A program made the position numbers and the translations under genes. A DNA stretch of 64,000 nucleotides, from contig OZ296652.1 in NCBI GenBank assembly GCA_965655095.1, positions 72,044,001 through 72,108,000 on the forward strand. Direction: 5' to 3'. The notes below the pieces were generated by a model. That model saw only the letters and a program-made list of their open reading frames with translations, was not told the origin of the DNA and ran no database searches. Source of the stretch: Haplodiscus bocki. Its lineage: Eukaryota. Shown here in pieces: positions 8,261 to 48,009 of this stretch. The number at the start of each line of letters is the position of its first letter. Position 1 is the stretch's first letter.

Positions 8261-8769
8261 CTCATTTTTCACACGATTCTGTTTCATCTTGTGGATTGAT
8301 TTTTTCTTTTGCCTTCAATTCAAGTAAATTTCTGATGATTCGTGTCTGTCTCGGAGTATGATCCTCAGGTTTGTCAGGACAATTGGGTGTCGGAAACCAG
8401 AATGTGTTGTTTTGCTCTTCTGGTTTGTGCAATTTAAGGATATCATTTTGGCAGGCAGTCAGATGCGGTTCACCTTCCGGAATCATATAGGAGATTGCTG
8501 CAACCACTGGTTTGATAAACTTGGATTGCTCCGGCGTGACAACGGAAAACTCTGCAATTGTTTATTCTTTTTAATCAGGTAAGGTGACTCCGTTGTGTTA
8601 GTTACTGCGCCTGCTATTTTCTTGTCAATTAATGTTGACATTGAGTGGGAAATCAGCAGACTTGCTGTCTTCGTGAAATTCTCCAGTGGTGTCACAGTGC
8701 CTGTTTTGTTCCATTCTGATGGATGATCAACCAGGTCTATGACTGCTTTCGTTGTCCTGGGTGGTAATC

Positions 8770-9282
8770 TCAGAGAGTCGTCAGTGACGACAGATTGTGG
8801 TTTGGATTAGTTTTGCTCGCAGCACTCTTGACTTGCATTCTCAAGTGCTGAAAAAGCATGAGACCCTGCCTCGTCTCAATGACTCCACTACTATGTCTCA
8901 TGAAATGCAAACCTATTATTGGCCCTGTCAAATTCCTCAAGACGACGAAATGTTCTGCAAAGGTAGTGTCTCGAATATCAAATTTGAGTGCGGTTGTTAC
9001 TAACGGTTTGTCTAACTGGCCATTAGCTACTTTTTTCCGAAAATGAGAGGGTCGTTGTTTTTGGAGACGTTGGCTGGGGTTTGTTGTTTGACTCTGTCCA
9101 ATTAGATTTTGGGCAATTGCACAGACATAGGCTCTTGAGTCTACTAAAGCGTCTTTTGCTAGTCCATTCTCGAAATCCAGAGGCACATACAGCATTTGTT
9201 TTCTGCCTTCCAGGACAATAGTGAAGGACAGTGGGAGATGCAATTCATTTGTTTGTTCATTTCTCACCAACCTCTCTTCCAT
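8770..9282 (-). pseudogene. Retropepsin aspartic protease
   Basis: ALVDSRAYVCAI (mutated DSG), VANG and IIGLHFMR motifs. Confidence 0.85.
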
Positions 9283-9699
9283 GTGAGGGGTTGTTTTTGT
9301 GAGCCGGGAATATTGTTATCTCTATTGCGGTTAGTCATTATGTGCCTATGTTTGGTCTGGATGTCCGTTTGACAACTAGTGGAGCTGTCGAAGAACGGTA
9401 CCAGTTTGTTCGCGGTGCGATTTTCTCCGAACTGTTGCCAGACAACAGTCTCAAAGCGTTGCTGCCGGAAAACCTGGAGATTTGATGGAGGTATTGTCGT
9501 TCTGATGGTCTCCGGTCTGTCAAGGGCAGTTCCAGAGTGAAGATGTGGCGTTTTTGAATTAGAGCTTAAGCCGGAGCCTAGACACTTCCATTTGGGTTCT
9601 TCTGTATACCTTGACGTTAATTCTGATTCTGTTTCGTCGGTCTTCTGTTCCAAGGAGGCGGTCTATTTGCTGCTTTGGCTCCAAAATATTATTTCTCTC

Positions 9700-11132: not shown

Positions 11133-11570
11133 CTCTTGAGGGGTAAATGTTCAACAGTAGTGAAGACTGATTTTTTTGCGTTTTTTTGATCAACTTCAGA
11201 GATTATAAGAAAAGTGTTTTTTTTTGAATAAAGCAATCGCCACAATCTTTACAGTCAACTGATAGTTCAAGTGGAAAAAGCTTCTTTAGTATTACTTAAA
11301 AATTAAATTATTTTCGTTTCTCCTATTTATACCTTTTCCTTGGCGGGGAACATAGTCGTTTACACGACAAGTGAAGGTACAATTAGGGAAAAGCATTTCA
11401 ATCATTTTAACTATAAAGTAAAAAATGCCGACTCTGGTGGGAAATAAACACCTTTTCATCCATCTCTTTCCTCATAGGCCGCGTCTTTTCCATTTTTCGA
11501 CGGAAAATGTACTTGCCTAATGCGTCAGAAATGGACATCAAAGTGCTTATTCCCGCACCGACTCACCAGA
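10758..11570 (-). repeat. 5' LTR of the Gypsy element (outer boundary uncertain)
   Basis: Ends ...CCCCACA at 10758, directly followed by a TGG-starting PBS. TATAAATAGG on minus near 11322-11331. Homologous to 891-1640, 39028-39850 and 40334-41138. Confidence 0.75.
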
Positions 11571-12404: not shown

Positions 12405-12800
12405 TCAATTCATTCTTTTTGAGGTGACGAATGAGCGTACAGCCTTGTCTATAGTTTCACGGAACCAAACATTGGTATAATAGAACAAGAGAGGATTCAC
12501 GTTGATTCCTACCACAAACAGAAGCAGCAATGAACTCTCTCCCCTCGGGTTTGGATTCGGGTTCGGGGAAAAGCCGTTGATTGTCTCCACAATTGCGAAG
12601 GGCATGTTGGTTATACCAAAAACTATAGAAATGAATGTAAACATCTTCTCAGTTTGTGCATCTGAATCTTCGCTGAACTCAAATGCCATGTACAAATTGT
12701 GCTTCAGGTAGTTTTTAGCCCCCGTGAAAAACCAAGTTAGGAGATCCAACTCATTTTGCATATCTTCCAGCTCCTCCCTGGTTGTTGCGTCGTCTCTTGA
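12405..12800 (-). CDS. GPCR terminal exon (ICL3 end, TM6, TM7, C-tail)
   Basis: TEKMFTFISIVFGITNMPFAIV (TM6 with Pro) and VGINVNPLLFYYTNVWFR (NPxxY-like plus helix 8), ending in a stop. The exact acceptor is uncertain. Confidence 0.75.
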   Translation of the reverse strand, partial: SRDDATTREELEDMQNELDLLTWFFTGAKNYLKHNLYMAFEFSEDSDAQTEKMFTFISIVFGITNMPFAIVETINGFSPNPNPNPRGESSLLLLFVVGINVNPLLFYYTNVWFRETIDKAVRSFVTSKRMN

Positions 12801-12932
12801 AGGCACGATATGAGGCAAAAAGTGTGCGTTTTGTTACAGATCTTTTTTAAAAACCACACTTGGTTTTTAGTCAAGAATCAGACTTGATTTCAAATTAGGC
12901 CACAAACAAAGATCGATTGTTTGAATAAGAAA

Positions 12933-14466
12933 CAAGACGGCCGGCTACCACCGGCATATTTTGCGCCTTCACATTTTAGTAAAGATGCCTTTTCAAAAGA
13001 AAGCGTTTTTTTAAATACTCTGTTTCATCATCATTTCTAATTTTTCCACCTTTAAAAACTTTTTGATTTTTAGCCAAAAGAACCTCACAAGTAACGTCGA
13101 AAGACATTTTTAAGAAACAATACCATTTGATATTCATTCTACAAAAAAAACTTGCCAAGTTTAGGGATTTTGAAAAAATTCAAGGTTTCTTTTTCGAAAA
13201 AATTCATCTATTTTTCTTCAAAAAAACCAAATTTTGAACATTTTGAGTAATCTCACTATTTCAGTCGTCGTATTCTACGGCAAACTTGCTCAGAAACCTG
13301 AAGATTTCAGCCAAAATCGTTTTTAGAGCGAACGCAATTGGCAAACATCGGGTAAAAAACTCACCCATTTGAGCAGATGACTTTGCTTCCATATTATATA
13401 TTATGGCGCAAAAAAAACTTCAAAATTAACTGACATCTGCACTGAAGAAAAAAAGTGCATTTGAAATTGAAAAAGAGGTTTTGAATTGACTTGGAAACAA
13501 GACCGGCATATTTTCCGCCCACCAGTTTTGTTAAAAATGCCTTTTAAAAGGATGAAAGCAATGGTTTTCAAAAAGCACTCTTTCTTCATCAAATTTTGTA
13601 ATTTTTCCAAATTAAAAACTTCTGATTTTTTTGCAAAAAAAACTTGACAAATAACTTGGAAAAACATTTTCCAGAAATAAGATCATTTGACCCGCATTCT
13701 ATAGGCGATTTGCCACTTTCACCGATTTTCAAAAATCCCTACTTTTTTTCGATTATTTCGAAAAATCTCAACGTTATTTCTCAAAATAGCCAACTTTCGT
13801 ACATACATGAGAGACCTTTCTATTTCAGTCGCATTCTACGACAAAATTGTTATGATATAGTTACGAAAAATTGTCGATTTCAGAATCCTCCTCCGGTCAT
13901 CTGCCACGAGAATTGGCAAGAAAACGTAAAGAAAAACACAGTGTTGACGCGTTGAATGGATGATTTTCTTTCCCTATTAAATCAAGGCACCCGGCTACCT
14001 CCGGGATATTTTTCGCTCTCCAACATTGTTAAAGATGCCCATTAAGAGGATGAAAGCGTTTTTTTTTCAAAATACTCTGTTTCTTCATCATTATTTGTAA
14101 CTTTTCCAACTTTGAATTTTTTCTGATTTTTTCCCAAGAAACCCTCAAAAAAATATGAAAACACATGAAAAAATTTGCCACATGTAGCGATTTTGAAAAA
14201 TTTCAAGAATTTTTTCGAGAAAAACTCATTCATTTTTCCAAAAAAAAAACAAATTTTGAATGTTTTGAAAATTGTTAATATCCCGTCGCATTCTACGGCA
14301 AATTTGCTACAATTTGGTGAAAAAAAAATTTCACGTTCAAAAACGTGAACGGAAATCGTTTTAGTGTGAACGCAATTGGCAAACATCAGGTAAAAAAACG
14401 TCAGAAATAGCGCATTCTGAGAGGAAGATTTTGCTTGCATATTTTTAATATGGCGCAAAATAATAA
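12933..14466 (-). mobile_element. Three near-tandem copies (about 480 bp each) of a non-autonomous Helitron-like repeat
   Basis: Copies start at 12933, 13498 and 13983. The minus-strand 3' end is a GC hairpin (GCCGG-tggtag-CCGGC; partly deleted in the 13498 copy) followed by CTTG. Shared internal motifs gcattctac and gcaattggcaaacatc. Confidence 0.65.
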
Positions 14467-15116
14467 AAATACTTGGGAAAAATTCACTGATAAAAAAGAC
14501 AACGACCCTACTGAATGATTAATTTTTCTTACATTCTTAAAAATATGTGGCGAAAAAATAACAACGCGCACACAACTTGCACACCTCTCAGACAGTAGTA
14601 ATGATGTGATGTTTGAGAAAAATCTTTGAAAACCAGTCTCAAAATACTCTTCTCGTTCATTTCTTAAACCTTTTCAAAAGTTGACCACAATACATTGCAG
14701 TCAGACGAAAAACATGCCGGTGCTATTCGGCTGTCTTGGTAAAAAAATTTTCACAGGAGTCGGTCTTGGGAGAAAGAAACATGATGTTAAGATTCATCTT
14801 AAGATTAGAGATAATATTCTGCAGATTACGATTGAAAGATCAACTTTGTAGGCGAGAGACATCGAAATTTATGGCAGAGGTGTTGTCTTTTCAGCAGTCC
14901 CACTCTATTCACTTTTATTTAATTTATTTAATTATTTAATTAGTTAAACTTTTGCCACACAATCTATAGTTAGACTTTGACACCAAAAAACACAAATCGG
15001 TGACATTAGAGATTGAGTCCTTGTTTTCCAAAGACACCGCGTGAACACAACACCATGAGCTATTGAATTGTATAACTCGAAAACTTTTCTGAAGACTGTT
15101 ATTATAGTCTTCAGAC

Positions 15117-17905
15117 GAACTATAGTACTATTTTTTGCAACCAACTAAAAAGTTTGTACAAATTTCAGTTTTGTAGTTGTAGTTCAACAAATACCGTAGT
15201 TGTATAATGATCAGGTTAAAACTAGCAACTTTTAACGGCAGAATTTGGGAAAAAATGGGTTCAAATTTTTTCCTAATTCACACTAAATTTGACTGTTTTT
15301 TATGAACATTTCGCAATTTGTTCCAGAAATTCCTTCCTGAGCAAGCCTTTTTCGTTAGAAAGTCGTAAATTAGAGGAAAATAGTTCGCGTTCAATTGTTG
15401 AGACCGCTTCCGAAAAGCGACTGATTATTTTTTCAACGGAATCACAATATAAATGTCTTCGAGCTTCAAATTCCAGTGGCAAGTAAGTTAAAGCTTTATG
15501 ATTGATTTCCCAAAAACCCATTTCTTAAATTTCTATTTCTGTTTTAGAAATAGCTTGAAATCGCGGAAACTCGCGGACGCTTCTGATTGTCCAAAGTTCG
15601 CGTTAACTGGAGCTTGCAAATTATTGTAGGGCCTGATATTAAACCTAACTTTGAAGAATAGTTTGTAATTCTTATTCCCCTCATACGAGCATGAGAATAA
15701 CATTCTTCTGTTTAAGGTGATTATATTGCTTCATCAACAGTGCATACCTCCAGCTGGCGAATGTACGCAGCTGTGTATAGAATTGTATTGGTTACTGTAG
15801 TTGGCACACTTCTCTTGTTCTTGTATGGCAGAGTAATTTTTGAAATACAGAAACGGAGAATACAGTCACGGAAACTCCAGAGGCAACTATCAGCTAGTAC
15901 TGCTATCGATGAAGCATCAGAGTTAGTGAAATTTGATGTAAGTTATCTTCCGCAAATGTAAACAAAGCGCATTATAGCACCGATGGTTTTTCAAATTGTT
16001 ACATTTTGGTTTAATAAAACCTTGGCTGTTCAAGGCTCTTCAAGCCAAAACCAGCACCGAGCGTCTCTATCTGAAATGTGCAGCTTTTCTTAACTCTTAA
16101 AAACCCAAAACTCATTTCACATTAATTGAGAATAAAACTCAAAGAACTTCAAAGTGCTCATCCGAGTGGGAAGAGAACCATCTTAGACTATTGAAATCGT
16201 AAAAATTCTTATGAGTAAGCATAATCCTACAAGCAGTAGTAGCGTATGTCATTTTGCTCAAGGGGTGGGGGGGGCGGAGGGAAGTTGACTGAGTAACCAG
16301 ACATGATCATTTACTCAACCCGACCCGAATAAATAAACACTATGTAATCGACAGCCGAGTCGACAATAACGTCACCGACAGGAGAACTTGGCTAGTCCAC
16401 GTGAAGCACCAGAGTCGTGAGCCAATTCCAAGCAACACTGAATGCCATACTCGATATGCATGAATAACTCTACAATTATTGTTCAAATGCAGAATCCTTC
16501 AGGATTATAAAGTTATCACAAAACAAATCGAGTTGACGGTGACGATACATGATGAACTATACCTGAACTCTGGCATTTCACTCCTCAAGGAGAGCTCTTG
16601 ACATCATCGAAACAGGACAAGAGAGTAATCTGAAACATGTTTCAAAATCGAAAAAAAAGTTTATTTTCAAATTGACTAAAGTACTCCAAAATACCATTGC
16701 ATGTTTTTCGTTGCCAAAAGGTCAGCTCATTCCTACTTCCTCGTTCTCCGTGTTACTATTTTTGTCGGTTTACATTCATTTTCCACTCTGTAAAACGTGG
16801 AGGAAAACAATTACCTGAGCGAAAGTTGAAATAACATCCTGTAATTTGAAAAATTCAACGCAGGGAACCTATTTCATTTTGTGTAGCTTCGCCGATCAGT
16901 AGTAGGTTGTAAAAACAGGTTGATGAAACTGTAACATTTCCGGCACTTTCCATACTGCCAAACTTGAAGGTGACAAGTAATAGCAGCAGGATTATGAGAA
17001 AACGTAATGCAATATAAAAACTTGCACAAAGTGACATCGTTTTAGAGTGCCTCATGATTACAAAAAGTAGAATTTTTGAAAGCACTTTTGAGGGACTTTG
17101 AACTTTTCATTTTTTTCAGCAATGTGAGATTCGATGATAAAAGTTTGAAAACGGCAAAAGTTGTGAAAGCTTGCTACATGTTGAACATTTGGTCGTCGTG
17201 ATCACACGTTACAATGAAGTGTTCAATTTTGCTGACATGTTAAATCTCTATTGTTGAAAATCTAAGGAGTTGTAACAGTTCCCACGTTTTTAGCAATTTA
17301 GGACGTGATAGGAGAAGAACAAAAGTGGCAGGAAAAAGGAAACTTTTTGCAATTATAAAAGAAGAACATAGCAATTTTTTGAAAAGTTTTCTTTTTGACT
17401 AAAAGTAGAGTCTTTTCATTCAAGTCTCAGAAAACAAATTTTCCGGAAGAGTCGATTTTGTGAGTTTGCGTAGTAAAAACAGAAGACCGCAAACAATTGA
17501 GGAATTTTGTTTCGACCTAGAAATTCCTACTTGGAGAACTTGTTTTGAACTGATTGTCATTTCAGAGCTGTGAGATTCCATAGACAAAATAAAACTGTAG
17601 AAAAACATTGGCAAGACTTTTTACAATTTGAAAACATGCATTTAGCAAACTTCGTGTTTGAAACGAATTTCATTACTGATCACTAGAAAGCTACATTGGC
17701 AAGGCGATGACACTGTTTCAATTCTGCCGCTTTCAGCATGGTGTGACTTGATGGGGGAAAACAGACACTGAAAAAAAAACAGAAAACTCATTGCAGTATG
17801 AAAACTGCAACTTGAAGACATTGTTTCACAGTACCTATTTTTGCTGATGAGAAGCATTTTCGATTGTGTTTCTAAACAATTTTGAAGTATCTGACATCTA
17901 TGGAA
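15117..17905 (+). repeat. Left arm of 2.8-kb inverted repeat
   Basis: Reverse complement of 24317-27105. Mirrored ORFs in the track: 15300/26700, 15740/26260, 16855/25135, 17420/24609. Confidence 0.95.
15717..15937 (+). pseudogene. Inverted (antisense) duplicate of the GPCR TM5 exon
   Basis: Identical translation and splice sites to 26284-26504, on the opposite strand, inside the inverted-repeat arm. Confidence 0.8.
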
Positions 17906-20599
17906 TAAACATGAAGATGTCGCAGTTCGGGCGTTTTGAAGTCGTTCGGAGTTTTAAAGAAACAACATGGAAAGCACGACATATTTGAGATCGTAGGATT
18001 TCGAGGCGCTCGAAGAAGCTAAGACAAACAAAGGAATCGCTCTGCTTGTGCGAATCTACAGACATGAAGTAAAAGGCATATGACTTCACACAAAACTTGC
18101 TTCTTAAAAAATGCTTTAATAGCTCAAACCCCTAAAAAGGTTATAACGTTCAGTTGACTATCCCGAAGACTGAAGAAGTGTAGTTTTTCTGAAAACGCTC
18201 TAAAAGTATGTTATTAGACACTTTGTTTCCATGAATGGTCTAAAAACTGAGTGAAAGTGTACTGTTGTGTCGTGCTGAGTTCACACTTTTCACCAACTAA
18301 AAAAAATTCAGCGTTGGATCTTTTCACTGCAATTCCATTATAGGGAAATTTGACTTTCAAAAGAAGTGGGTGCATACCTACGTTGAAATTTTGTCAAAAA
18401 CGGGACAACTGTAACAATCAAACTTCTTTTCACCTGCGGTCCCTTCACTGTTTTTGTGCTTTCCACTGCTGCCGCAAGCAAAAATATCATTCCAAAGAGG
18501 AAACGGAAAAAAGTGCTCAATAAATTTGTGTTGTAGTAACCAGACAAGACACTCAATCCCAAAAAGTTGCCTTTGGGATCCGCTTTCGAAAACAACGTTT
18601 GTTGTGTTTGTTGGGATTAATTGCTTGTGTCCAATTGTCCACCGGTTCATCATGGTTGATACAAATGTCTGAAATTGTCAACTGGCAGGTCCAATTCTGA
18701 GTATCATCGACCTTTCCGGGAGTTTGCGTTAATTAAAGGCAGAACTGTTGTCAGTCAGCAAATTCACACCCAAAGGGAAACAGTCCTAAGTAAACTAGAT
18801 AATCCTGTGGATTTTTATGAAGAAGAGTGATACCAAAGCTTTTCCAGCAACTGTGGAAGTGCTTTTACATTATATCTAGTTAGTTTTCAAAACAATTACT
18901 TTTTTTCAAAACAAATACAAAACAAAAGCGTGCTATTCAGTAATCAAAAAAAGAACTCCTTTAGCGAGTTCCGGAGAAATGCAAAAAAAACTCTTTGGAT
19001 TCTGCAGAATTCTGAGTAGCTCAATGCTTCATCGAAGCCGCAATTGAGCGTTTTCTGCATTGAATTGGACTGGTTGACTTCTATTCTTTGTTTTTCAATG
19101 TTCCGTTGTTTTCTTTTTCATACCTCCGAAACTGAATACTGCTAATCATGTGTCTACTCCTTCTGACAATTGTGCAGCTCCGATGCAATTGACGGCTGTC
19201 TGACAAGCAGCACTCATTTAATTACAAACAGCAACCACAAAAAATTAAGTGGGAGTTTTATGAGGAACACAAAAACATGATGGGAATTAGGTTGAATTGT
19301 ATAATTTCCTTTCAGGTAAGCAGGAAAAGGTTTTAGTTCCGCCTCAATTTCTCCAATTCCCATTTGGTGACATTGAAAACTCATATTCACAAATTAAAAG
19401 CACTTTATTGCATAGTAGGTGGAAAGACATCAAAGAAAATACAACAAAACAATCGATGGTGAAATTATGAGATGCAAAAATCTTTCATCAAATGCAACAT
19501 TAAATGGGTTATAAACGGTTCATAAACGTTTCCCCGCAGCCAATTTGATGTTTTTCAAAATTTTGGTTTCATTCCCGATGAATTTCGTGTTCATAAAGGA
19601 GACCTGGATGCAAATGGAGTGAAGCAAACAAGAAAAACTGTTACGTAGGTTGAAAGAAATTTGAACAAACAATCAGCTGCAACGAGGCTTTGATCTTGAA
19701 AAAGGTACTTCAAAACTTGACGAACAAAACAGCGTCAAAGTTGGAAGATCGAGACATTCAGAGAAACGAGTCATCGTTAGTTTATTTCCTTCGCAGGATC
19801 GCAGGCGTGTAGCAGAACCGGGACTGAAATGAAAATGTCACTATAACGGGAAAGATTTAACAACTGGATCAAACTTGTTGCGCAAAGGTCATTGAAATGC
19901 TCAATACCGTTTCTAAAGCTTGTCTGCGCCGATATTTTTTGCAGCATTCGTACGAGCGAAAAAAAAATTTTGAACCCTGTTAAAGACTTTCGGAGAATTG
20001 ATGGACGATGTACCGTCTTCATATTTCTATAATTTTTTAGTCAGAAAACCGTAACAAAAACTCTGGACGAAAATGCACTTTCTGATTTCATAGCTTTTTT
20101 AATACAAGTGCACAGAGCTAGCTAATGTGCCTCATACTATTTTGTTATCAGCATGTTTTCGCATGTTTTGGTCAGGAAAATTGGTCTTCTTATTTTTTGC
20201 TCTAAGTCCCGGAAATTTATCATAGACCATTTTCAAAATCTTTTACTCACAATGTAGGTTGTCTCCAATTCTTGTGACAAAAACCTGTTGAATGAGTTTT
20301 CTTCTTCTTTGCAAGGAATGATAATTTAATTTACAGCAACAATAAAAACAAAGGTCAAAAATTTGGCGGCTTCAGATTAAAATATGGATGTTGCATTTGT
20401 TCTGTTTTCAGCGAATTCTTATGTTGGTGTGTGCAGTAACGCTATTTGAAAAAAGACGAGACTATCTCAACATTAGAAGTTGCATCCAAAAGAAACGACG
20501 AGAACTTTTATTACTCGGAGGAAATTTTGACCATTAACACAAGACCATACTTAACATACACGGTAGGATAGTTTTTGCACTGCAAAGTTTGTCTTTTTT

Positions 20600-22260
20600 A
20601 ACGAAAAAACTTCCTCGGCCAAAAGTATTATGAACGATTCCTTCTCAATTCACAATGTTGATTTGAACAGATGTGTTCTTTTCCCATTGTTACACTCTTG
20701 CATTCATTGAACAAAACGAATAATTTAACTTTTAGTTTTTTCTGGCACTTTTTTTGATCGCGCCTAAAATTGATTTGTAGATCTTTTTCTTGTTTTTGAT
20801 GAACAAGATGATTTTTCAAAGAAGTTTTTCCTCGAGGAAAAAACCCTTTTTTAGTCCGTCATTGTTGCTTAACAAACCAGTACGTCTATAGTCACTTCAG
20901 AAAAGGTCACACAATCAGAAATGTTTTCACATTTTGCAATTAGAAAACAAACAAATTAGTGTAACTGGAAGCTAACTCTATTTCACTTCTCCAGAAGGTT
21001 ATCTTATACTTGCGCAAATAAGAGTGAATATGAGTTGTTCTGCTGTGAACGGAACGTTAGCAATTGGCATTATAGCTGAGCAATGCAGACACTTTAGGTA
21101 AACCCTTCATAACTCTTTGTGCGAAGACATTCACACTTCCGTCGACAACAGTACTTTCAGAAAGGGGACTAAACATATCTGTGAAAACATTTTTCGACAA
21201 ATCAACCACAAATACCTAAAAACTAATCTTTCATCTTTCGTTTTTATTTTCTGTAGCAAGAACTTGTCGCTCGAACTGCAACAAACATGTGACATGAAAG
21301 TTCCGTTTCGCTCAAATGGACAAATCAACTGTTGATTCGATATGTTGATAACAGAAAACTGAAAGCCTACTTAAAAAACAAACCAGATGGCCGACTTTCA
21401 ACAAAACTTCGATTTTACTAACTCAGCAAATCGAAAGTTTGAAATGAAAACTATCTGGAGGTACTGAAACAAATGTGGAACTTTTAATCCTTCCAAAAAC
21501 AATATAAATTATATTTATCCTTAGCAGTGTTTAGTGATTGCGTCGAGATAAAAAAAGCAGCACTTGTTAAATACTGCCCCAAAATGAACAATACTGATAA
21601 TGATTTTGTTCAAAAAACTTTTTAACAAAGAGAAAGGTCAAATGGAAAAAATTGGCCCACCAAAATGTGCTTTATCTGTTCTTCGGAAGAATTATAGGTC
21701 GTTTCAAATTTTTATTTGAGTTTCCTCACGTATTCATGAACAAAACCCGAGTGGTGCAACACTGAAGGAAATGTTCCAGTTTGTTGAACATCGAATGAAG
21801 TGTTTCTTGTTGAAAAGAGATCGAAAGATTGTGAAACTTAAAAAAAAGGAAAGTAAACGTTTGCTGTTTGACAGCCCACTTTTCTGGATTATGTTGGAAA
21901 ACAGTCAAACATTACCAGATGATGTACAATCAAGAATCCATGAGAACATTTTCGTTTGTTTCGAAAAACATTAATATTTCAGGAACATTTCAAACAAAAT
22001 CGTCACTAATGTGTTCTCTTACTTCACTTGCACCAAAATGTCTGACCGGTCAACGAAAACGTTCTCAAGAAACACAATATCTGACTGTCTCCAGTTGAAT
22101 GGTTAGTCTTATGTTGAAAACTACATGGAAAAGAACGACCATTTCGTAGAGGAAACGTCCATTAGAACTCGATGAAGCTTTTGGAAAACCTTTCAATTTT
22201 CGATTTCCCGGTTACAAGATAAGACTAAGTCAACGAAAATTCAGACTTCAATATACTTTC
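20600..22260 (+). pseudogene. Heavily decayed protein-primed DNA polymerase B (Polinton/Maverick-like) relic
   Basis: Faint colinear motifs (FEFPHVFMNKT; SGLCWKTVKH...YNQES; YVENYMEK) resembling LEYP..IHEKT, HGM.V.KVH...FKQS and FYGKTMEN. Confidence 0.35.
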
Positions 22261-22269
22261 ACATGAAAT

Positions 22270-22600
22270 TTTGACAATTCATGGAGACACATTGTCTAAT
22301 AACTTTATTTTTTGGGCGTTTCCAGAAAAACTACAGCTCTTCGTTCTTCCTAGTTAGTCAACCGAACCTCAATGGGGGGTTTGAGCTGTTCAAGCTGTTT
22401 TCAAGAAGCAAGTTTTGTATGATGTCATATGTTTTTTACTTCTTGTCTGTAGATTCGCAAGCAGAGCGATTCTATTGTTTGTCTTAGCTTCTTCAAGCGC
22501 CTCGAATTTTTACGCTCCCAAACGTGTCGTCTTTTCCATGTTGTTTCTTCAAAACCCTGAACGACTTCAAAACGCCCGAACTGTGACATCTTCATGTTTA
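22270..22600 (-). repeat. Older inverted copy of 17905-18240
   Basis: Alignable by eye but visibly more diverged (e.g. aaaacgcccgaactg, ttgtcttagcttcttc). Confidence 0.85.
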
Positions 22601-24316
22601 GTGTCACACGTCTCAAGCTGCCATTTTATTAACTTTCCATGGGTTCTTCGCTGACAACCAAGACTACGCACCACCACCAACTCAATCAAATTTGACGAAT
22701 TTGTTTTCCAAGGTCATTGCTGATTACTGATAATTTTCCAAAATTTTCAGACTGTTGAATATTGGGCTGACCGGAAACTTTTTTCTTTGTAGTTGAAAAA
22801 AATGAATTGAAAACAACAGTTACGGTAAATTAGCATCTTTTTTTCTCAACTACACAATTTCATTTGCAAATTGCGGCATTTTGCAGGACTTCGGTTTCAA
22901 GAATGATCGTGACTAAGTTAGTGAAAACCTCAATTCATCACCAGCTCAGCCTTTATTCCATATAATCACTCTCTCGAAGTTTTCATGACTTCTCCTACTG
23001 TCGGATTTGGAAATTCGGACGTTTTTTCACAAGGCCGAAAGTGTTTTAAAAATTATGTTCTTACTTGAACTGTAACTTTTTCCTAAATTATTTTTCTGAA
23101 ACAGAAATAAGTTTTTCAAAGAACAAAAAACAATACTTCAGAATTTTTTGGTCTTTTTGGTTGGTCTGATGCAGTCATTAAATGTTGAAAATGTCGAAAA
23201 AACAATCTAAATTTTTGTGGATTTAGAAGCAAATTCCAATTTGGATCAGGACTTTGGTAGACATCGTTTAATTTTGTGAGTTGGAGAAGATTTTCTTCAA
23301 AAAAAGAAGATTTACTGCTTTGATTAGTTTTCTCCAAGAATGTCTCATCTTCCCGAAAAATCCACAAACACCACCCTATTTGTTTTGGTGAAAAGACTTG
23401 AAGATGTTGTTCAAACGAAAACGAAGAAAAAAATCAGATTTAGGCAATATCTCCAAGATGCAGTCAGCATTTCTAAGATTGATTTGATTTCTCAGAGAAA
23501 AACTCCGATAAACTGGCTGAAACTGTTTTGCTACTCATCCTTTTCGCTAGCGAGAAATGGTTTTAGGAAAAATTGCACATGAAGTATCAGCAGGAGCAGA
23601 TTGAGTTTGTGAAAATTGTTCTAAAAATTAAGCAGTTTGTTTTTGTTCCTTGGTAGCGTTCCTCCGATTTTCCGAAACGATAAATGGTCTGTGATGTCAA
23701 AGTTACCTATGGCTGTTTTTAGACTTTTAACGGATCAAAAATTTTGAAAACAATAAGAAACAAGTCCGCTACTTGGATTGTTTTGAACAAAACCCGGTTT
23801 TACAACAATTATGCCTTCACTAAATTTGTCCATCGTTTTTCATATTGCAAAAGGTGCCGAAAATTGAAACGTCTTGACGAATTTCAAACTAGTTTTGTGG
23901 TAATCAACGGTATTGCACTCCTTAAATTAAGTACCATATGGTTAAAATTTCAAAAAGAAACAGTTTCAAATATTTTGCCATCGCGAAAGTGTTCAATTTA
24001 GTTTCATAGTGCTGAAGATGTGAAAAATTTCTAGCCCCCTCCACGAAGTTCGAATGATTGTTGTGAATGAGTTCAGCATCAACCGAACTAAAATGAAATC
24101 TTATGTTGCAGTTTTTTTCTTGTTTCTTGATCTTCCTTCCAACTAGTTTCACCAGAAGAAAATCTGTTAGTGTTATATTTTGTTTTAAAAATTGCAAAAA
24201 GTTTCCCATTTGATTAGAACTATTGGCCTTTTTGATTCAACTTCCCTAAATTTGTTCCTTGAGGTTGTAAACGTTTTCTTTTTTGCTTCTGTGGAAGCTC
24301 TAATTCAAATTTAACA

Positions 24317-27105
24317 GTTCCATAGATGTCAAAAACTTCAAAATTGTTTAGAAACACCATCGAAACTGCTTCTCATCAGCAAAAGTAGGCAACTGTGAAA
24401 CAATGTCTTCAGGTTGCAGTTTTCATACGGCAAGGAGTTTTCTGTTTTTCTTTAGTGTCTGTTTTTCCCCATCAAGTCAAACTATGCTGAAAGCGGCAGA
24501 ATTGAAACAGGTTCTTCGCCTTGCCAATGTAGCTTTCTAGTGATCAGAAATGATATTCGTTTTAAACACGAAGTTTGCTAAATGCATGTTTTCAAATTGT
24601 AAAAAGTCTTGCCAATGTTTTTCTACAGTTTTATTTTGTCTATGGAATCTCACAGCTCTGAAATGACAATCAGTTCAAAACAAGTTCTCCAAGTAGGAAT
24701 TTCTAGGTCGAAACAAAATTCCTCAATTGTTTGCGGTCTTCTGTTTTTACTACGCAAACTCACAAAATCGACTCTTCCGGAAAATTTGTTTTCTGAGACT
24801 TGAATGAAAAGACTCTACTTTTAGTCAAAAAGAAAAATTTTCAAAAAATTGCTATGTTCTTCTTTTATAATTGCAAAAAGTTTCCTTTTTCCTGCCACTT
24901 TTGTTCTTCTATCACGTCCTAAATTGCTAAAAACGTGGGAACTGTTACAACTCCTTAGATTTTCAACAATAGAGATTTAACATGTCAGCAAAATTGAACA
25001 CTTCATTGTAACGTGTGATCACGACGACCAAATGTTCAACATGTAGCAAGCTTTCACAACTTTTGCCGTTTTCAAACTTTTATCATCGAATCTCACATTG
25101 CTGAAAAAAATGAAAAGTTCAAAGTCCCTCAAAAGTGCTTTCAAAAATTCTACTTTTTGTAATCATGAGGCACTCTAAAACGAATTCATTTTGTGCAAGT
25201 TTTCATATTGCTTTACGTTTTCTCATAATCCTGCTTCTATTATTTCTCATCTCCAAGTTTGGCAGTATGGAAAGTGCCGGAAATGTTACAGTTTCATCAA
25301 CCTGTTTTTACAACCTACTACTGATCGGCGAAGTTACACAAAATGAAATAGGTTCCCTGCGTTGAATTTTTCAAATTACAGGATGTTATTTCAACTTTCG
25401 CTCAAGTAAATGTTTTCCTCCACGTTTCACAGAGTGGAAAATGAATGTAAACCGACAAAAGTAGTAGCACGGAGAACGAGGAAGTAGGAATGAGCTGACC
25501 TTTTGGCAACGAAAAACATGCAATGGTATTCTGGAGTACTTTAGACAATTTGAAAACAAACTTTTTTTTCGATTTTGAAACATGTTTCAGATTACTCTAT
25601 TGTCCTGTTTCGATGATGTCAAGAGCTCTCCTTGAGGAGTGAAATGCCAGAGTTCAGGTATAGTTCATCATGTATCGTCACAGTCAACTCGATTTGTTTT
25701 TTGATAACTTTATAATCCTGAAGGATTCTGCATTTGAGCAATAATTGTAGTTATTCATGCATATCGAGTATGGCATTCAGTGTTGCTTGGAATTGGCTCA
25801 CGACTCTGGTGCTTCACGTGGACTAGCCAAGTTCTCCTGTCGGTGACGTTATTGTCGACTCGGCTGTCGATTACATAGTGTTTATTTATTCGGGTCGGGT
25901 TGAGTAAATGATCATGTCTGGTTACTCAGTCAACTTCCCTCCGCCCCCCCCCCCACCCCTTGAGCAAAATGACATACGCTACTACTGCTTGTAGGATTAT
26001 GCTTACTCATAAGAATTTTTACGATTTCAATAGTCTAAGATGGTTCTCTTCCCACTCGGATGAGCACTTTGAAGTTCTTTGAGTTTTATTCTCAATTAAT
26101 GTGAAATGAGTTTTGGGTTTTTAAGAGTTAAGAAAAGCTGCACATTTCAGATAGAGACGCTCGGTGCTGGTTTTGGCTTGAAGAGCCTTGAACAGCCAAG
26201 GTTTTATTAAACCAAAATGTAACAATTTGAAAAACCATCGGTGCTATAATGCGCTTTGTTTACATTTGCGGAAGATAACTTACATCAAATTTCACTAACT
26301 CTGATGCTTCATCGATAGCAGTACTAGCTGATAGTTGCCTCTGGAGTTTCCGTGACTGTATTCTCCGTTTCTGTATTTCAAAAATTACTCTGCCATACAA
26401 GAACAAGAGAAGTGTGCCAACTACAGTAACCAATACAATTCTATACACAGCTGCGTACATTCGCCAGCTGGAGGTATGCACTGTTGATGAAGCAATATAA
26501 TCACCTTAAACAGAAGAATGTTATTCTCATGCTCGTATGAGGGGAATAAGAATTACAAACTATTCTTCAAAGTTAGGTTTAATATCAGGCCCTACAATAA
26601 TTTGCAAGCTCCAGTTAACGCGAACTTTGGACAATCAGAAGCGTCCGCGAGTTTCCGCGATTTCAAGCTATTTCTAAAACAGAAATAGAAATTTAAGAAA
26701 TGGGTTTTTGGGAAATCAATCATAAAGCTTTAACTTACTTGCCACTGGAATTTGAAGCTCGAAGACATTTATATTGTGATTCCGTTGAAAAAATAATCAG
26801 TCGCTTTTCGGAAGCGGTCTCAACAATTGAACGCGAACTATTTTCCTCTAATTTACGACTGTCTAACGAAAAAGGCTTGCTCAGGAAGGAATTTCTGGAA
26901 CAAATTGCGAAATGTTCATAAAAAACAGTCAAATTTAGTGTGAATTAGGAAAAAATTTGAACCCATTTTTTCCCAAATTCTGCCGTTAAAAGTTGCTAGT
27001 TTTAACCTGATCATTATACAACTACGGTATTTGTTGAACTACAACTACAAAACTGAAATTTGTACAAACTTTTTAGTTGGTTGCAAAAAACAGTACTATA
27101 ATTCG
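24317..27105 (-). repeat. Right arm of 2.8-kb inverted repeat
   Basis: Reverse complement of 15117-17905. Confidence 0.95.
26284..26504 (-). CDS. GPCR internal exon (ECL2 end, TM5, ICL3 start)
   Basis: AAVYRIVLVTVVGTLLLFLYGRVIFEIQKRR. Acceptor ttctgtttaag (alternative cag at 26481) is phase-compatible with the phase-1 donor at 47375. Donor GAT|gtaagt. Confidence 0.75.
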
Positions 27106-27237
27106 CGTTATGGGCAAACAAGTTTCGTACGGGTTGTCGGCATTTTCGAGTGGAAAGCAGACATGGTTATCCGGCGACCGTCCTGTGGTATTAGGAAGAT
27201 GAAACAATAATTTTTGTATTCATTTGTGATAGTTGCG

Positions 27238-28911
27238 AGAAATATTGGTTGTCCGCATGGCTAGTAGGCGTGTTACCTCGTCTAAAACAGGTAGCTTCGC
27301 CGTTCTCAGCAGTTTGTAACTCTTTCCGACTCCCCAATAGGGCAAAAATTTCCTCAATTTGTCGTAGAATCGGCTCAATTGCTGTCTGATATGTTTACTT
27401 ACTGAAATATGTGTGACTTCACTCGTGGAAAACTCGTTATCTAGGGAGTTCATTTCGGGTTCTTGTTCATCTCTTAGCTTTATAGTTTCTGTGGAAATGT
27501 CGTGCGTTTGAGTGCTGTTTTCTGTTCCACTACTCATTAACTAGGGATAAGTAGACTGAAAGTTAATGTTTTGTAAAGGTTGTTATAGGTGATGCGTATT
27601 TCAGATCAGTGGAATCTTCTAAAGTGGTAGTAAATTACAAAATCACAGAGTAGAAAGTCGGATTGACGTTTTTTTACACCAGGGTTAATCGCAGTTATGT
27701 ACGTTACAAGGTATTGCGAAGTTATGATGAAGCTAGTAGCGGAAAATGGGCCGTAGATTAATTGTGCACGCAACAGAGTCACGTGATAATTTGAGTACTT
27801 CTCATTGGAGCTCAAACATGTACTCCACACTATTAGCTAGCACCAATTATCCTTACATTTATCTAACTTCTGAAACTACACTTTCATTTTCATTTAATTT
27901 TCATGATTGAAGCCACACGGGTGATTTTATGATAGCCTCTCTAATTGAATTGTATAATTATTTCATGTCTTTTAGCTCTATATATTGTCGATGGTAAATT
28001 GCTTGATTGACTGAAATGAGATTATACAGGGCTCACTGTCATTGTTTTTTTTTCGTAGCACTGAATGTACAAATACCTGAAATAAGGCTAGCAGTAGGCT
28101 TAATGCACTTTAAAGTTATTCCCGCGCCTATTTATTTAAATTTCACGAGAGTGAGGTCTGGTAAAGCTCACTCACAACATGGCACTACCGCCGCGCTGAA
28201 TATTGGACATTCGAGACCGAGGAGAAATATGGCTCATTCTCGATGATGAATTTTAATGATGTTCAAACCGTCTTGCACTTTGAGTGAAGTCTGCCATAGC
28301 TCACTCAAAACAATGAATTCGTTAATGCTGGTTCAAACTGCATCTTAGAGTGAGGTGTATGTCGGTTCACTCTAAACCATAAATTAGAATATCGACTCTA
28401 TGAACTGCACTGACGTGATGCGTATCGCGGCTGACTGCCGTTTGGTAAATTTTACTGACGGTGCAGTTGGATAATGCGGGATAGAGCTCATTTTCAATTA
28501 AAGATTTCGATATATGTAAAAACACTGGGCTTTAGAGTGAGGTGTATTGCGGCGCGGCTCACTCTGATGAGAGAAATTATGATGTGCAACATAACTACAG
28601 TGGAGTGTGGTGTATTGTAGCTCACTTCCGAATGATTTCCTAAACTATGGATTCTGGTGTGTGGCATGAATGGCATCAAGTGAGGTGTGTTCAGCATTAT
28701 TCGGCACGTGTGGAAATGTTACCTAATTGCGTTCATATCATTGGAAGAGGAAGTAATATTACATATTAGCTTTTATATGGACTGTATATAATGCTGCATA
28801 GGTTCGTATGCTTCAAGTGATACTACATAGGTGCAAGGGCTTCATAATAAGACATATGTTATATCTATAATTTATTTATATGGTTAGTATTTCCTTCATG
28901 GGTGCATTACA
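27238..28911 (-). mobile_element. Solo LTR (family Y) with palindrome array and gag N-terminal ORF
   Basis: Starts TGTAATGC at 28911 and is colinear with 35438-37027. ORF 27220-27537 begins MSSGTENSTQ. Confidence 0.7.
28015..28705. repeat. Array of about 11 short palindromes (GAGTGAG-N~11-CTCACTC) at about 66-bp period
   Basis: GCTCAC-type anchors at about 28031, 28098, 28166, 28232, 28299, 28365, 28430, 28486, 28557 and 28620. Confidence 0.85.
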
Positions 28912-30118
28912 GAGGTGATTAGAAATTTGTTCTTGAAAGTTCAGGAAACTCGACTTCATTTTTGCAAAATGGTTTTCAGGAACTAACGTACATCTTTTTA
29001 TCAACAAACTAATCTCTATATTGAAACTTGATAACTTTTGATCTTTAATTCATCCATTAGACTTATTCATAATCAAAGTTTCCTCAGTTGTTCGATCTTT
29101 ATTCTGTCATAAAAGCTTACAGAAGCAGTAGAGCCATCAAGTTTACTTGAGGGCAAAAAAAGCGGCCTTCTAGAGAAAATTCAGCCAATGACGATTAGGT
29201 TAACACTGACACTGATGAATCTCCGGTTGGTAATAAAGTCAAACCAATAGTTCAAGGAAAACTCGATGTTCAGATGAATTCTTACTTCCATACTCTGAAA
29301 GGAGAGGTAACCAAAGTGAAACAGCGGAATCAACAGCCAGCTGCTAGGCCAACCAACTAAAAACATCACACAACGACGACGTTCTGTTAAAAACGAACGA
29401 CGTCACTGTATCGACTACATCAAATTACTCATAATTTTGACAGAACTGACTCTTTTGAATAACTGTTTTTCACAGGTAATGTGATTACCCTAATGTTCAG
29501 CTGTTTTCTGAACTTTCAGAATTGACTTTCATTGAACTCTAATGAAAACTCTTTACTCTTAAACAAAATTGATTCAAAAAATACCAAATATAGCCGATTC
29601 TTTTATGTAGCCTCTAGTTATAATCAAGAAACTTGTCTTCTACAAAATGTATTTTCGATATGACGATTTACAAATTCTCAACACGGCGCCCAGCGTTTAT
29701 ATGAGGGCTCAAACTCATCCACACTTTGGCATTAAACTCCATTTTGAACTTAAGGGGATTTGGGGAGCTTTGTCTTTTTTAGGCCTTTACCGGTTTTCTA
29801 GGATGTGTAAATAGAGCGCTTCATCTTAATCGGAACTGCTTTCAAAGATTTGCGCTCCATTCCTGTTGGTTGAGTAACCCAGAACTATTGTTCAACGCAT
29901 TACCAGATAATGATGCACATTAGGTGGTTTTCTTAATCTCTAGTGCGAGCATTTCAAGTTAGTCTGAAACTGGTAAATGCTTGTTGTTTAATCAATTGAC
30001 AGGATCTTGCGGACAACCATGCCTTGCAAAAACTCAAAACCTAAGCTCATCCTCGCAAATGGCAACTAGTAACGTTCAAACTGGAGAGGCAAGTTTAAAA
30101 TGCCGTTGATAAGCATAA

Positions 30119-30630
30119 CAAGACACACGGCTACCTCCGGGATACTTTGCGCCCTCCAATTTTGTTAAAGATGACTTTTAGAAGGATGAAAGCGTATTTT
30201 TTTCCAAATACTCTTTCTTCGTCATATTTTCTAATTTTTTCAACTTCAATTTTTTTTGCTGATTTTTAGCCAAAAAAACCTCAAAAATAAGGTGGAAAGA
30301 CATTTTTAAGAAAAAAACCATTTGAGACGCATTCTAGAAAGAATTCGCCATATGTAGCGATTTTGAAAAAATTCAAGGTTTTTTCGAAAAAACCCATTTT
30401 TTTCCCCAAAAACCCAAACTTTGAACGTTTTGAGAAGTTTTACTATTTCAGTCACATTCTACGGCAAATTTAAAATTTGCTACAATTTGGTAAAAAAATA
30501 ATTTCACGTTCAGACGTGAACAAACTGCCGATGTTGGCGTGAACACAATTGGCAAACATCAGGTGAAAAAATGCACCTATTTGACAAGCACATTTTGCTT
30601 CCATATTTTAAATATGGCACAAAATAATAA
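30119..30630 (-). mobile_element. Helitron-like repeat copy
   Basis: Same family as 12933-14466. Confidence 0.7.
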
Positions 30631-30649
30631 ACCCTACAATATAACTAGT

Positions 30650-47375: not shown

Positions 47376-48009
47376 CAATGAGATGTCTGGAAGCACCATT
47401 TAACTTGCTGTAGTCCTCTTCCATAATTTCATGACAGGTGTTTATGAAGGGTAAACAAACAACTGTAGAAAACGCGATGACAAAAGTTATTATCCCGTTT
47501 GCCTTCTTTTTGGTGAAGTTGCGTTTGAAGTAGTCGTATTTGACAACTGCGAGGTACCTGGAGACGGCGATGGAGAGGATGAGGAGCCAGGATAGAGTGG
47601 GGGTCATTCTCCAGAAGTAGATGGTCACCTGACACGCACACTTGGTGTAGCCCCACTTGGACAGTTGGGCCAAGGTGAAAAGAATGCCGGACAAGTTGCA
47701 CGTCACATCCACTGTAGACAGCGCACATGCAAAGATGTCTTTGGACTGTTTGTTCTTCTTCGTGCAGAACACTGCGGCTGTCGTTCCCGAGAGAAAAGTT
47801 CCAACAACGCGCACTACCAATGACGCAGTGAATAAGTAGTCCTGGAACTCTGCCAGCACAAAAAACTTCTGGTTTGGGTCAATGTTGGTGCCGTTGTCGA
47901 CATTCCCGTTTTCAATTTCAGAATCTATCACTAAAATAGAAACTTCTCCCTCTCTGTTGACTGTAATCATGATCTGTTTGTTTGAGCATTTGTTTGCATT
48001 AACTAGCAT
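47376..48009 (-). CDS. Class A (rhodopsin-like) GPCR, first coding exon (N-term, TM1-TM4)
   Basis: DIFACALSTVD (TM2 LxxxD), C at the top of TM3, ILSIAVSRYLAV (DRY changed to SRY), TM4 ending CLP. Donor ATTG|gtaaga at 47375. Confidence 0.88.

What the first reader, a model, noticed from the sequence alone, without database searches (positions are those of the whole stretch)
15117..27105. 2.8-kb inverted duplication puts an antisense copy of a GPCR exon in the gene's own intron
Seen: the arms 15117-17905 and 24317-27105 flank a 6.4-kb spacer. Both hold the TM5 exon with intact splice sites. The sense copy (26284-26504) lies in the correct order between the TM1-4 and TM6-7 exons. Inference: the pre-mRNA could fold into a ~2.8-kb duplex covering the exon and both splice sites, causing exon skipping, ADAR hyper-editing or endo-siRNA production. 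This would be a built-in cis silencer. The locus also keeps one sense exon whichever way the block is inverted.
Basis: partly seen in the sequence, partly recalled or inferred. Interest (0 to 1): 0.8.

Follow-up and report, generated by a model that had tools for sequence, protein, structure and literature searches.

The report
Old intronic palindrome duplicating a GPCR exon
A receptor gene carries, inside its own 13.5-kb intron, a real backwards copy of the segment holding its TM5 exon; the two copies are old and keep overwriting each other by gene conversion, and no RNA data could be reached to show that this silences the gene.

Summary
The inverted duplication is real. The arms are 15116-17905 and 24318-27105, 98.0% alike over 2794 aligned bases. 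A second assembly and k-mer contigs from two samples carry the same junctions.

The gene model holds. A three-exon rhodopsin-type GPCR lies on the minus strand: TM1-4 at 48009-47376, TM5 in the right arm, TM6-7 at 12795-12408. The left arm holds an identical antisense copy of the TM5 exon in intron 2.

Three things change the picture:
- **Longer arms.** They continue inward as 17906-18264 against 22600-22249 at 82%. A 1717-base extra block interrupts the right side.
- **Patchwork identity.** It ranges from 0.1% to 8% divergence inside the arms and 18% in the extension. The two assemblies differ 20-60 times more in the left arm than in the flanks, mostly by copying the right arm's letters. This is an old palindrome under ongoing arm-to-arm gene conversion.
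- **Exon end.** The in-frame end of the TM5 exon is probably 26300 (GTTAGT donor, phase conserved in a relative).

A 906-base perfect duplex over the exon is possible on paper. No RNA run was reachable, so the cis-silencer idea is untested. Most likely this is a tolerated structural by-product. The scan has noted similar inverted duplications elsewhere in this genome.

The parts
47376..48009 (-). Exon 1 of the GPCR (start codon to TM4), ending in phase 1 before a GTAAGA donor
   Evidence: Pfam 7tm_1 E=3e-11, 43.7 bits against a cut-off of 30.5, profile positions 8-121. Sequence and phase. The same exon end (ATTG|GTAAG) occurs in the relative L002.
24318..27105 (.). Right arm of the inverted duplication. 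It carries the sense TM5 exon and lies in gene order between exon 1 and exon 3.
   Evidence: Present in the ENA contig as L005 12552-15342.
26300..26504 (-). Sense TM5 exon. The acceptor is tttaag| at 26506-26505. The in-frame end is probably 26300 (GTTAGT donor, phase 2).
   Evidence: phase arithmetic. Pfam 7tm_1 profile 146-191. A homologous exon and a GTTAG donor in phase 2 occur in L002/L003.
22601..24317 (.). 1717-nt block present only on the right side. It interrupts the palindrome arm and has no target-site duplication, terminal repeats or recognisable domain. It is either an insertion here or a deletion from the left arm.
   Evidence: Junction sequences. Repeat scan. Pfam scan of its ORFs. 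The same 1717 letters lie between the two sides in the Logan contig (table 5).
22249..22600 (.). Inner continuation of the right arm; old and diverged
   Evidence: 82% identity to 17906-18264 in inverted orientation.
18265..22248 (.). Core spacer of the palindrome (3984 nt). Its left part, to 20250, was laid and is carried by the low-depth spacer contig. No coding or RNA-family match over the whole.
   Evidence: No further inverted homology. No Rfam family or tandem repeat. No Pfam domain. The contig covering 17678-20250 has about half the depth of the arm contig.
17906..18264 (.). Inner continuation of the left arm, contiguous with it
15116..17905 (.). Left arm. It is the inverted copy lying in intron 2, 2.3 kb upstream of exon 3 in gene direction.
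   Evidence: Both of its junctions are bridged by read-derived contigs. Present in the ENA contig as L005 3348-6135.
15717..15937 (+). Antisense copy of the TM5 exon with its splice motifs. It is identical to the sense copy in both assemblies, and no other GPCR exon lies on the plus strand.
   Evidence: tblastn gives 100% at 15719-15937. No variable site falls in this range among the four arm sequences.
12408..12795 (-). Exon 3 (third intracellular loop, TM6, TM7, C-terminus). The acceptor is ttcaag| at 12797-12796 in phase 2, and the stop codon is at 12407-12405.
   Evidence: Pfam 7tm_1 profile 193-259. The same phase-2 acceptor occurs in L002.

Best explanation
This is an old inverted segmental duplication (a palindrome) inside intron 2 of a three-exon rhodopsin-type GPCR gene. 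A segment of at least 3.15 kb that holds the TM5 exon was copied in reverse orientation about 4-6 kb downstream. The most likely cause is an inversion with a staggered break, or a replication template switch; this step is inferred. Since then the two arms have repeatedly overwritten each other by patchy arm-to-arm gene conversion. That keeps the outer 1.1 kb, exon included, virtually identical, while unconverted patches have drifted to 8-20% divergence. Conversion is still going on, because the two available assemblies carry different conversion mosaics in the left arm. The antisense exon copy is a passenger of this structure. The gene stays intact and the palindrome is tolerated. A primary transcript would contain both arms and could form long double-stranded RNA, but nothing shows that this happens or that it has been selected as a regulator.
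For: Shown:
- The arms, their coordinates and their identity.
- The same structure in a second assembly.
- Read-derived contigs bridge the outer-left junction in four runs and the inner-left junction in both samples. One contig spans right arm, spacer and left arm.
- 27 sites separate left from right arm in both assemblies, so two distinct copies exist.
- The arm continues inward at 82% identity after a clean 1717-nt interruption on one side only.
- Block-wise divergence is 0.1%, 3.0%, 0.2% and 7.8%.
- The window and the ENA contig differ at 12.5 sites per kb in the left arm, against 0.2-0.6 in the flanks. At 26 sites the ENA left arm carries the right arm's state, interleaved with 4 retained left-type sites.
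- A Logan contig reproduces that mosaic exactly, with 10 substitutions and 4 gap letters, so the mosaic is in the reads.
- Arms and spacer hold no transposon domain, RNA family or tandem repeat.
- The spacer contig has about half the depth of the arm contig.
- All three exons are open in both assemblies.

Literature: inversions are often flanked by inverted duplications of unique sequence, frequently from one breakpoint only, as explained by staggered breaks (PMC1885836).
Against: No RNA data, so an effect on splicing, editing or small RNAs cannot be excluded. The origin mechanism is inferred: no outgroup locus shows the ancestral orientation of the spacer, and the junctions carry no diagnostic microhomology. 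The window-specific letters of the left arm were not seen in any contig of the four runs (table 3). Contigs drop minor variants, so this is not absence, but that haplotype rests on the window assembly alone. The exon lies in the most homogenised block. That could be chance, a property of where conversion starts, or selection; I cannot tell which.
Confidence: 0.68

Rival explanations
1. One reading: the palindrome is a built-in cis regulator. The pre-mRNA folds into a hairpin of about 2.8 kb over the TM5 exon and its splice sites. This gives exon skipping, ADAR hyper-editing or self-targeting siRNAs that tune the receptor down, and the arrangement is kept for that reason.
For: Both arms lie in one transcription unit if intron 2 is transcribed in one piece. 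A 906-nt perfect duplex covers the exon and both splice sites; the predicted duplex energy for the exon plus 60 nt on each side is -637 kcal/mol. The exon-bearing block is the best homogenised one, and the structure is old. Injected long dsRNA silences genes in acoels (PMC11091193). Hairpin RNA loci made from inverted duplications of their targets act this way in Drosophila (PMC10317233, PMC10292708).
Against: No RNA evidence of any kind. The loop is 6.4 kb, so the exon is made minutes before its antisense partner and may already be committed to splicing; this is general knowledge of co-transcriptional splicing and an inference here. Homogenisation is explained by gene conversion alone and also covers 900 nt of plain intron. 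The related gene in L002/L003 has no such repeat. Earlier notes of this scan report further inverted duplications in this genome, which points to a mutational habit of the genome, not a device of this gene (unchecked).
Confidence: 0.1
2. The palindrome is mildly harmful and the gene is on its way out. Hairpin formation, a 13.5-kb intron and a strong out-of-frame GTAAGT donor 16 nt past the in-frame one lower the output of correct mRNA. The locus is a decaying member of a fast-evolving receptor family.
For: The GTAAGT donor at 26283-26282 joined to the exon-3 acceptor gives a stop after 14 codons. Intron 2 is about 270 nt in the relative L002 but 13.5 kb here. The neighbouring paralogue 49 kb downstream is only an exon-1 fragment within 19.6 kb. 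The DRY motif reads SRY.
Against: All three exons are open and identical in both assemblies. The in-frame donor and acceptor are present and conserved in phase with the relative. The age of the palindrome shows that the gene has survived with it for a long time.
Confidence: 0.14
3. The arms are the long terminal inverted repeats of a foldback-type or other DNA transposon that captured the exon, as earlier notes report elsewhere in this genome.
For: Earlier notes report a foldback transposon flanked by duplicated exon copies in this genome (unchecked). The overall layout, long inverted arms around a spacer, fits.
Against: The right-arm exon sits in correct order and phase within the gene. The related gene has the same exon at the same place without any repeat. 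The spacer contig is at the lowest, unit depth level and the arm contig at about twice that, which does not fit a multi-copy element. There is no transposase or other domain, no target-site duplication at the outer junctions, and no other copy in the window or the fetched loci.
Confidence: 0.05
4. An assembly artefact: a haplotype join or a chimeric contig creates a false inverted copy.
For: The outer 1.1 kb is virtually identical, as collapsed or duplicated haplotigs can be. The window-specific left-arm letters were not seen in the contigs of the four runs.
Against: Two assemblies agree. k-mer contigs made directly from reads carry three of the four junctions, and one contig runs from arm to arm through the spacer. 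27 fixed left-versus-right differences are shared by both assemblies. The arm contig has about twice the depth of the spacer contig in X1 and X2 and 1.6 times in X4; this is a rough measure only.
Confidence: 0.03

Closest known systems
Inverted duplications of unique sequence at inversion breakpoints (staggered-break model; Ranz et al. 2007, PMC1885836)
   Same: Two copies of non-repetitive, gene-bearing sequence in inverted orientation directly flank a segment of a few kb. Often only one breakpoint region is duplicated, and the copies then decay.
   Different: Here the whole event lies inside one intron and spans only about 12 kb. The ancestral orientation of the spacer could not be checked. 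The copies have not simply decayed; gene conversion keeps large parts alike.
Palindromes kept alike by arm-to-arm gene conversion (sex-chromosome ampliconic palindromes; from my own knowledge, not looked up here)
   Same: Long inverted arms around a unique spacer, very high arm identity alongside diverged patches, and haplotype differences that copy the partner arm's state.
   Different: The arms here are about 3 kb, not tens to hundreds of kb. They hold one exon of a gene and not whole genes, and the palindrome lies within an intron of that gene.
Hairpin RNA (hpRNA) loci giving endo-siRNAs in Drosophila (PMC10317233, PMC10292708)
   Same: An inverted duplication of part of a protein-coding gene that could fold into a long hairpin with perfect homology to that gene.
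   Different: hpRNA loci are separate transcription units acting in trans on the parent gene and are defined by small RNAs. Here both arms sit in the target's own pre-mRNA, one arm is the working exon itself, and no small-RNA data exist.
Intron-spliced hairpin (ihpRNA) silencing constructs and natural inverted-repeat silencers in plants, such as the rice Lgc1 glutelin locus, the soybean CHS inverted repeat and maize Mu killer (from my own knowledge, not looked up here)
   Same: Sense and antisense copies of gene sequence lie in one transcript, separated by a spacer.
   Different: Those have been shown to make dsRNA and siRNAs, and they silence in trans as well. Here nothing is shown, and the spacer is never spliced out on its own.
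Inverted repeats around the mouse Sry exon, or Alu pairs, that drive circular RNA formation (from my own knowledge, not looked up here)
   Same: Long intronic inverted repeats within one pre-mRNA could pair and alter splicing.
   Different: In those cases the repeats flank the exon and bring its splice sites together. Here the repeat contains the exon, and the loop holds no exon, so back-splicing is not the expected outcome.

Membership tests
Rhodopsin-type GPCR (Pfam 7tm_1) | Match to the 7tm_1 profile above the curated cut-off | tested here: met
   Exon 1 alone scores 43.7 bits against a cut-off of 30.5, E=3e-11.
Rhodopsin-type GPCR (Pfam 7tm_1) | All seven helices present in order in one gene | tested here: met
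Exons 1, 2 and 3 match profile positions 8-121, 146-191 and 193-259. Exons 2 and 3 are sub-threshold on their own (E=0.1 and 0.04). A relative has the same three exons in the same order and orientation.
Rhodopsin-type GPCR (Pfam 7tm_1) | E/DRY at the end of TM3 and NPxxY in TM7 | tested here: inconclusive
   Read from the translations. TM3 ends in SRY, not DRY. TM7 has NPLLFYY, an NPxxF/Y variant.
Inversion-associated inverted duplication (staggered breaks) | Arms made of ancestrally unique, non-repetitive sequence | tested here: met
   No transposon domain, RNA family or tandem repeat. The arm contig has about twice the depth of the spacer contig, unlike the high-copy repeat at 14300-14697. 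The arm holds a native exon.
Inversion-associated inverted duplication (staggered breaks) | The segment between the arms is inverted relative to the ancestral order | not testable with these tools
   No orthologous locus was found. The only relatives are a distant gene (58% identity, L002/L003) and an exon-1 fragment.
Palindrome with arm-to-arm gene conversion | Mosaic of near-identical and diverged blocks along the arms | tested here: met
   Differences per aligned sites in four successive blocks are 1/1135, 23/769, 1/620 and 19/245. The inner extension is 18% diverged.
Palindrome with arm-to-arm gene conversion | Differences between haplotypes that reproduce the partner arm's state | tested here: met
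   At 26 sites the ENA left arm equals both right arms while the window's left arm differs. At 10 sites the reverse holds. The left arm has 12.5 differences per kb against 0.2-0.6 in the flanks. The mosaic is confirmed by a read-derived contig.
hpRNA / endo-siRNA hairpin locus | Long near-perfect inverted repeat with homology to a target gene | tested here: met
   The arms are 98% alike. A 906-nt perfect run includes the 205-221 nt exon.
hpRNA / endo-siRNA hairpin locus | Both arms transcribed on one RNA, and 21-23 nt small RNAs from the arms | not testable with these tools
Foldback or other TIR transposon | Multiple copies in the genome, target-site duplication, element-encoded protein | tested here: not met
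   The spacer contig is at the unit depth level and the arm contig at about twice that. There is no duplication at the outer junctions, no domain and no other copy in the window or fetched loci. A whole-genome copy count was not possible.

The most novel reading that the evidence does not exclude
A natural intron-hairpin autoregulator in an animal. The gene's own pre-mRNA pairs an essential exon with an antisense copy in the next intron, giving self-directed siRNAs, heavy editing or regulated exon skipping. Gene conversion serves to keep the two arms perfectly complementary over evolutionary time.
Probability: 0.08. Interest if true: 0.7.

Novelty: new member of a known kind. Interest (0 to 1): 0.32.

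Why it matters
As it stands, this is a well-documented small palindrome inside a gene. Two assemblies of the locus, probably two haplotypes, catch arm-to-arm gene conversion in the act, at a scale (3 kb, intronic) far below the sex-chromosome palindromes where the process is usually studied. If RNA data later show that the hairpin forms and affects the receptor's mRNA, it would be a rare animal case of a gene carrying its own hairpin silencer. It would then also be a ready test of how far apart two complementary segments can lie in a nascent transcript and still interfere with splicing. Earlier notes of this scan report further inverted duplications in this genome. If they hold up, the more useful question may be genome-wide: why this lineage makes and keeps such structures.

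Tried and rejected
- **RNA evidence.** Expression, splicing, editing and small RNAs could not be examined.
- **Transposon origin.** Pfam scans of ten ORFs in the arms and spacer found nothing. There is no Rfam family and no tandem repeat. The ends of the 1717-nt block and the outer junctions show no target-site duplication or terminal repeats, and no Helitron-like ends. Rejected as the main explanation.
- **Paralogue comparison.**
  - The exon-1 paralogue P0002 lies 49 kb downstream on the same ENA contig. It has no exon 2 or 3 within 19.6 kb and shares only 385 nt of DNA at 94.8% with the window. It could not serve as a guide to the ancestral intron.
  - L002/L003 (58% identity) gave the exon structure and intron phases but no alignable intron DNA, and they hold no inverted repeat.
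- **More haplotypes.** An exact look-up of an arm ORF found only the two arms of the same ENA contig. The exon-2 ORF itself was never called as a gene in the collection.
- **Depth as copy number.** The arm contig is about twice as deep as the spacer contig in X1 and X2. The single-copy flank contig varies between 1.1 and 1.8 times the spacer, so I use depth only as weak support.
No phase-0 acceptor with a pyrimidine tract exists before the conserved part of exon 3, and the relative has no GT at that place. Rejected in favour of the phase-2 model.
- **Left out.** The big representative-protein search and structure prediction were not run, because the family assignment was not in doubt.

Full report
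**Observation**

The inverted repeat is in the sequence as described. The repeat finder returns four collinear inverted pairs between 15116-17778 and 24445-27105. One BLAST alignment joins them into arms 15116-17905 and 27105-24318, with 2794 aligned positions, 98.0% identity, 46 mismatches and 5 gap openings. It is the only inverted repeat of 200 nt or more in the window. The window has no N and no masked letters.

**Is it an assembly artefact?**

Three lines of evidence say no.

- A contig of a separately built public assembly (ENA ERZ26859043, ctg86752, 237,911 bp) covers the locus and has the same two arms around the same spacer: L005 3348-6135 and 12552-15342, 98.6% alike.
- I laid Logan contigs of four public runs (two samples, one study) on 14300-20250.
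  - They bridge the outer-left junction at 15116 in all four runs (pieces 14823-15160 or 14838-15160).
  - They bridge the inner-left junction at 17905/17906 in both samples.
  - In three runs one 6.87-kb contig starts in the right arm's inner end, crosses the 1717-nt block and the whole spacer, and ends in the left arm.
- 27 sites distinguish left from right arm in both assemblies, so two distinct copies exist.

The arm contig has roughly twice the depth of the spacer contig: 57.1 against 27.9, 71.6 against 34.9, and 10.8 against 6.72. The flank contig is noisy, so I give depth little weight. The outer-right junction lay outside the stretch I could lay and rests on the two assemblies alone. 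No single-molecule read was available.

**The gene**

The gene lies on the minus strand.

- **Exon 1** (48009-47376) runs from a start codon through TM1-4 and matches Pfam 7tm_1 above its cut-off (43.7 bits, profile 8-121).
- **The TM5 piece** in the right arm matches profile positions 146-191.
- **The ORF at 12818-12408** matches 193-259.

The three pieces tile the profile in order. A related gene from another assembly (L002/L003, 58% identical in exon 1) has the same three exons in the same order and orientation. Its introns are 5.3 kb and about 270 nt. Exon 1 ends in phase 1 at ATTG|GTAAG in both genes. Exon 2 begins after a pyrimidine-rich AG and completes a glycine codon in both. No other GPCR exon lies on the plus strand, so the left-arm copy at 15717-15937 is an orphan, antisense to the gene and inside intron 2.

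**A correction to the exon**

That gives phase 0. The only good acceptor of exon 3 (ttcaag| at 12797-12796, after a pyrimidine tract) needs phase 2. Joined to the 26284 end, it runs into a stop after 14 codons. The relative has the same phase-2 acceptor (ccag|G) and has no GT at all where the window has GTAAGT. What both genes share is a GTTAG donor a few codons upstream, in phase 2: window GA|GTTAGT at 26299-26298, relative TT|GTTAGA. I therefore take 26504-26300 (205 nt) as the likely in-frame exon, and GTAAGT as a nearby out-of-frame donor. This rests on phase arithmetic and one relative. Only RNA can settle it.

**Fine structure**

The arms are neither uniform nor complete as first described.

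- The left arm runs without a break into 17906-18264. This stretch pairs at 82% with 22600-22249, not with the sequence next to the right arm. On the right side a clean 1717-nt block (22601-24317) sits exactly at that point. The original duplicated segment was therefore at least 3149 nt, and the core spacer is 18265-22248.
- Substitutions fall in blocks: 1 in 1135 sites (15131-16265, holding the exon), 23 in 769, 1 in 620, 19 in 245, and then 18% in the inner extension.

**Two assemblies, four arms**

I aligned both arms of the window with both arms of the ENA contig.

- At 27 sites both assemblies share the same left-versus-right difference.
- At 26 sites only the window's left arm differs, and the ENA left arm carries the right-arm state: 15360, 16266-16538, 16753-17036, 17386 and 17770. 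These are interleaved with four sites (16621-16689) where the ENA left arm keeps the left type.
- At 10 sites only the ENA left arm differs, eight of them within 41 nt (17569-17609). There the window's left arm has the right-arm state.

Differences between the two assemblies per kb are 12.5 in the left arm, 1.8 in the right arm, 2.5 in the spacer and 0.2-0.6 in the flanks. A Logan contig (record 4: 10 substitutions and 4 gap letters over 15131-16966) reproduces the ENA left-arm mosaic exactly, so the mosaic is in the reads and is not a polishing effect.

The simplest account is patchy arm-to-arm gene conversion, with different tracts fixed on different haplotypes, laid over a much older divergence of roughly 8-20%. 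The window-specific left-arm letters were not seen in any contig of the four runs. Contigs drop minor variants, so this does not show absence, but that version rests on the window assembly alone.

**Origin**

- Arms and spacer hold no transposon domain, no Rfam family and no tandem repeat.
- The junctions show no target-site duplication or terminal repeats.
- The spacer contig is at the lowest depth level, next to a clearly high-copy repeat at 14300-14697.

A mobile-element origin is therefore unlikely. Inverted duplications of unique sequence flanking a segment are the known signature of inversions made by staggered breaks, often with only one breakpoint region duplicated (PMC1885836). A replication template switch would give the same picture. 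I could not test the orientation of the spacer in an outgroup, so the mechanism of origin is inferred.

**What it might do**

If intron 2 is transcribed in one piece, the pre-mRNA holds both arms. They include a 906-nt perfectly complementary run (15361-16265 and its partner) over the exon and both splice sites. The predicted duplex energy for the exon plus 60 nt on each side is -637 kcal/mol. Long dsRNA silences genes in acoels when injected (PMC11091193). Hairpin loci derived from inverted gene duplications silence their parents in Drosophila (PMC10317233, PMC10292708).

Against it as a function:

- No RNA data exist here.
- The partner arm is made 6.4 kb after the exon, which leaves time for the exon to be recognised first (inference).
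- Homogenisation is fully explained by conversion and also covers plain intron.
- The gene has stayed open in both assemblies although the palindrome is old.
- The relative has no such repeat.
- Earlier notes of this scan list further inverted duplications in the same genome, one with patchwork identity (unchecked). This points to a habit of the genome, not a device of this gene.

**Organism**

Earlier follow-up notes call this genome an acoel flatworm. I did not test that. The public contigs come from metagenome-type assemblies.

**Verdict**

It is a real, old, intronic palindrome that duplicates an exon and is kept alike by ongoing gene conversion. That makes it a new member of a known kind. 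The cis-silencer reading is neither supported nor excluded; I put it near 10%. Interest is modest as it stands and would rise sharply with RNA evidence.

Noticed in passing
window 26282-26300: Two donor motifs lie 16 nt apart at the end of the TM5 exon: GTTAGT (in frame with exon 3, phase conserved in the relative) and a stronger-looking GTAAGT. Using the second would put exon 3 out of frame, with a stop after 14 codons. This may be a built-in source of unproductive transcripts.
   Followed up: partly
window 17569-17609 (ENA contig L005, left arm): Eight substitutions fall within 41 nt in the ENA left arm only. Both right arms and the window's left arm agree with each other. It looks like a surviving patch of the old left-arm sequence, about 20% diverged, that escaped conversion on that haplotype.
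   Followed up: partly
window 14300-14697: A very high-copy repeat: summed contig depth is 13,000 to 134,000 across the four runs, against about 10-70 next to it, with many internal deletion-type joints. Related copies at 76-81% identity lie at 12921-14467 and 30106-30631 in direct orientation, on both sides of the palindrome.
   Followed up: no
window about 1060-11480, minus strand: A degenerate LTR retrotransposon sits just downstream of the GPCR gene. Its LTRs are about 580 nt and 97.9% alike (around 1060-1639 and 10900-11480). Gag with a zinc knuckle (9750-10118) and integrase-like ORFs (5715-6146) are broken into pieces. Another first-stage note concerns its gag/LTR overlap.
   Followed up: no
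ENA contig ctg86752, locus L001 10001-10585 / L006 19650-20234: An exon-1-only paralogue of the GPCR lies 49 kb downstream in the same orientation. It is 82% identical in protein, and only 385 nt of DNA align at 94.8%. No TM5 or TM6-7 exon lies within 19.6 kb, so it is probably a gene fragment.
   Followed up: partly
window 27220-27537, minus strand: A 105-codon ORF with an ATG lies 115 nt outside the right arm, within intron 1 of the GPCR gene. It has no Pfam match, and the ENA pipeline called it as a gene. Its significance is unknown.
   Followed up: no
L002 3957-7310 and L003 4461-7311: The related GPCR gene in the other assembly has a BEL/Pao retrotransposon 2.7 kb upstream. It is intact in one contig (1117 aa) and split in the other. 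The two contigs are probably haplotypes.
   Followed up: no
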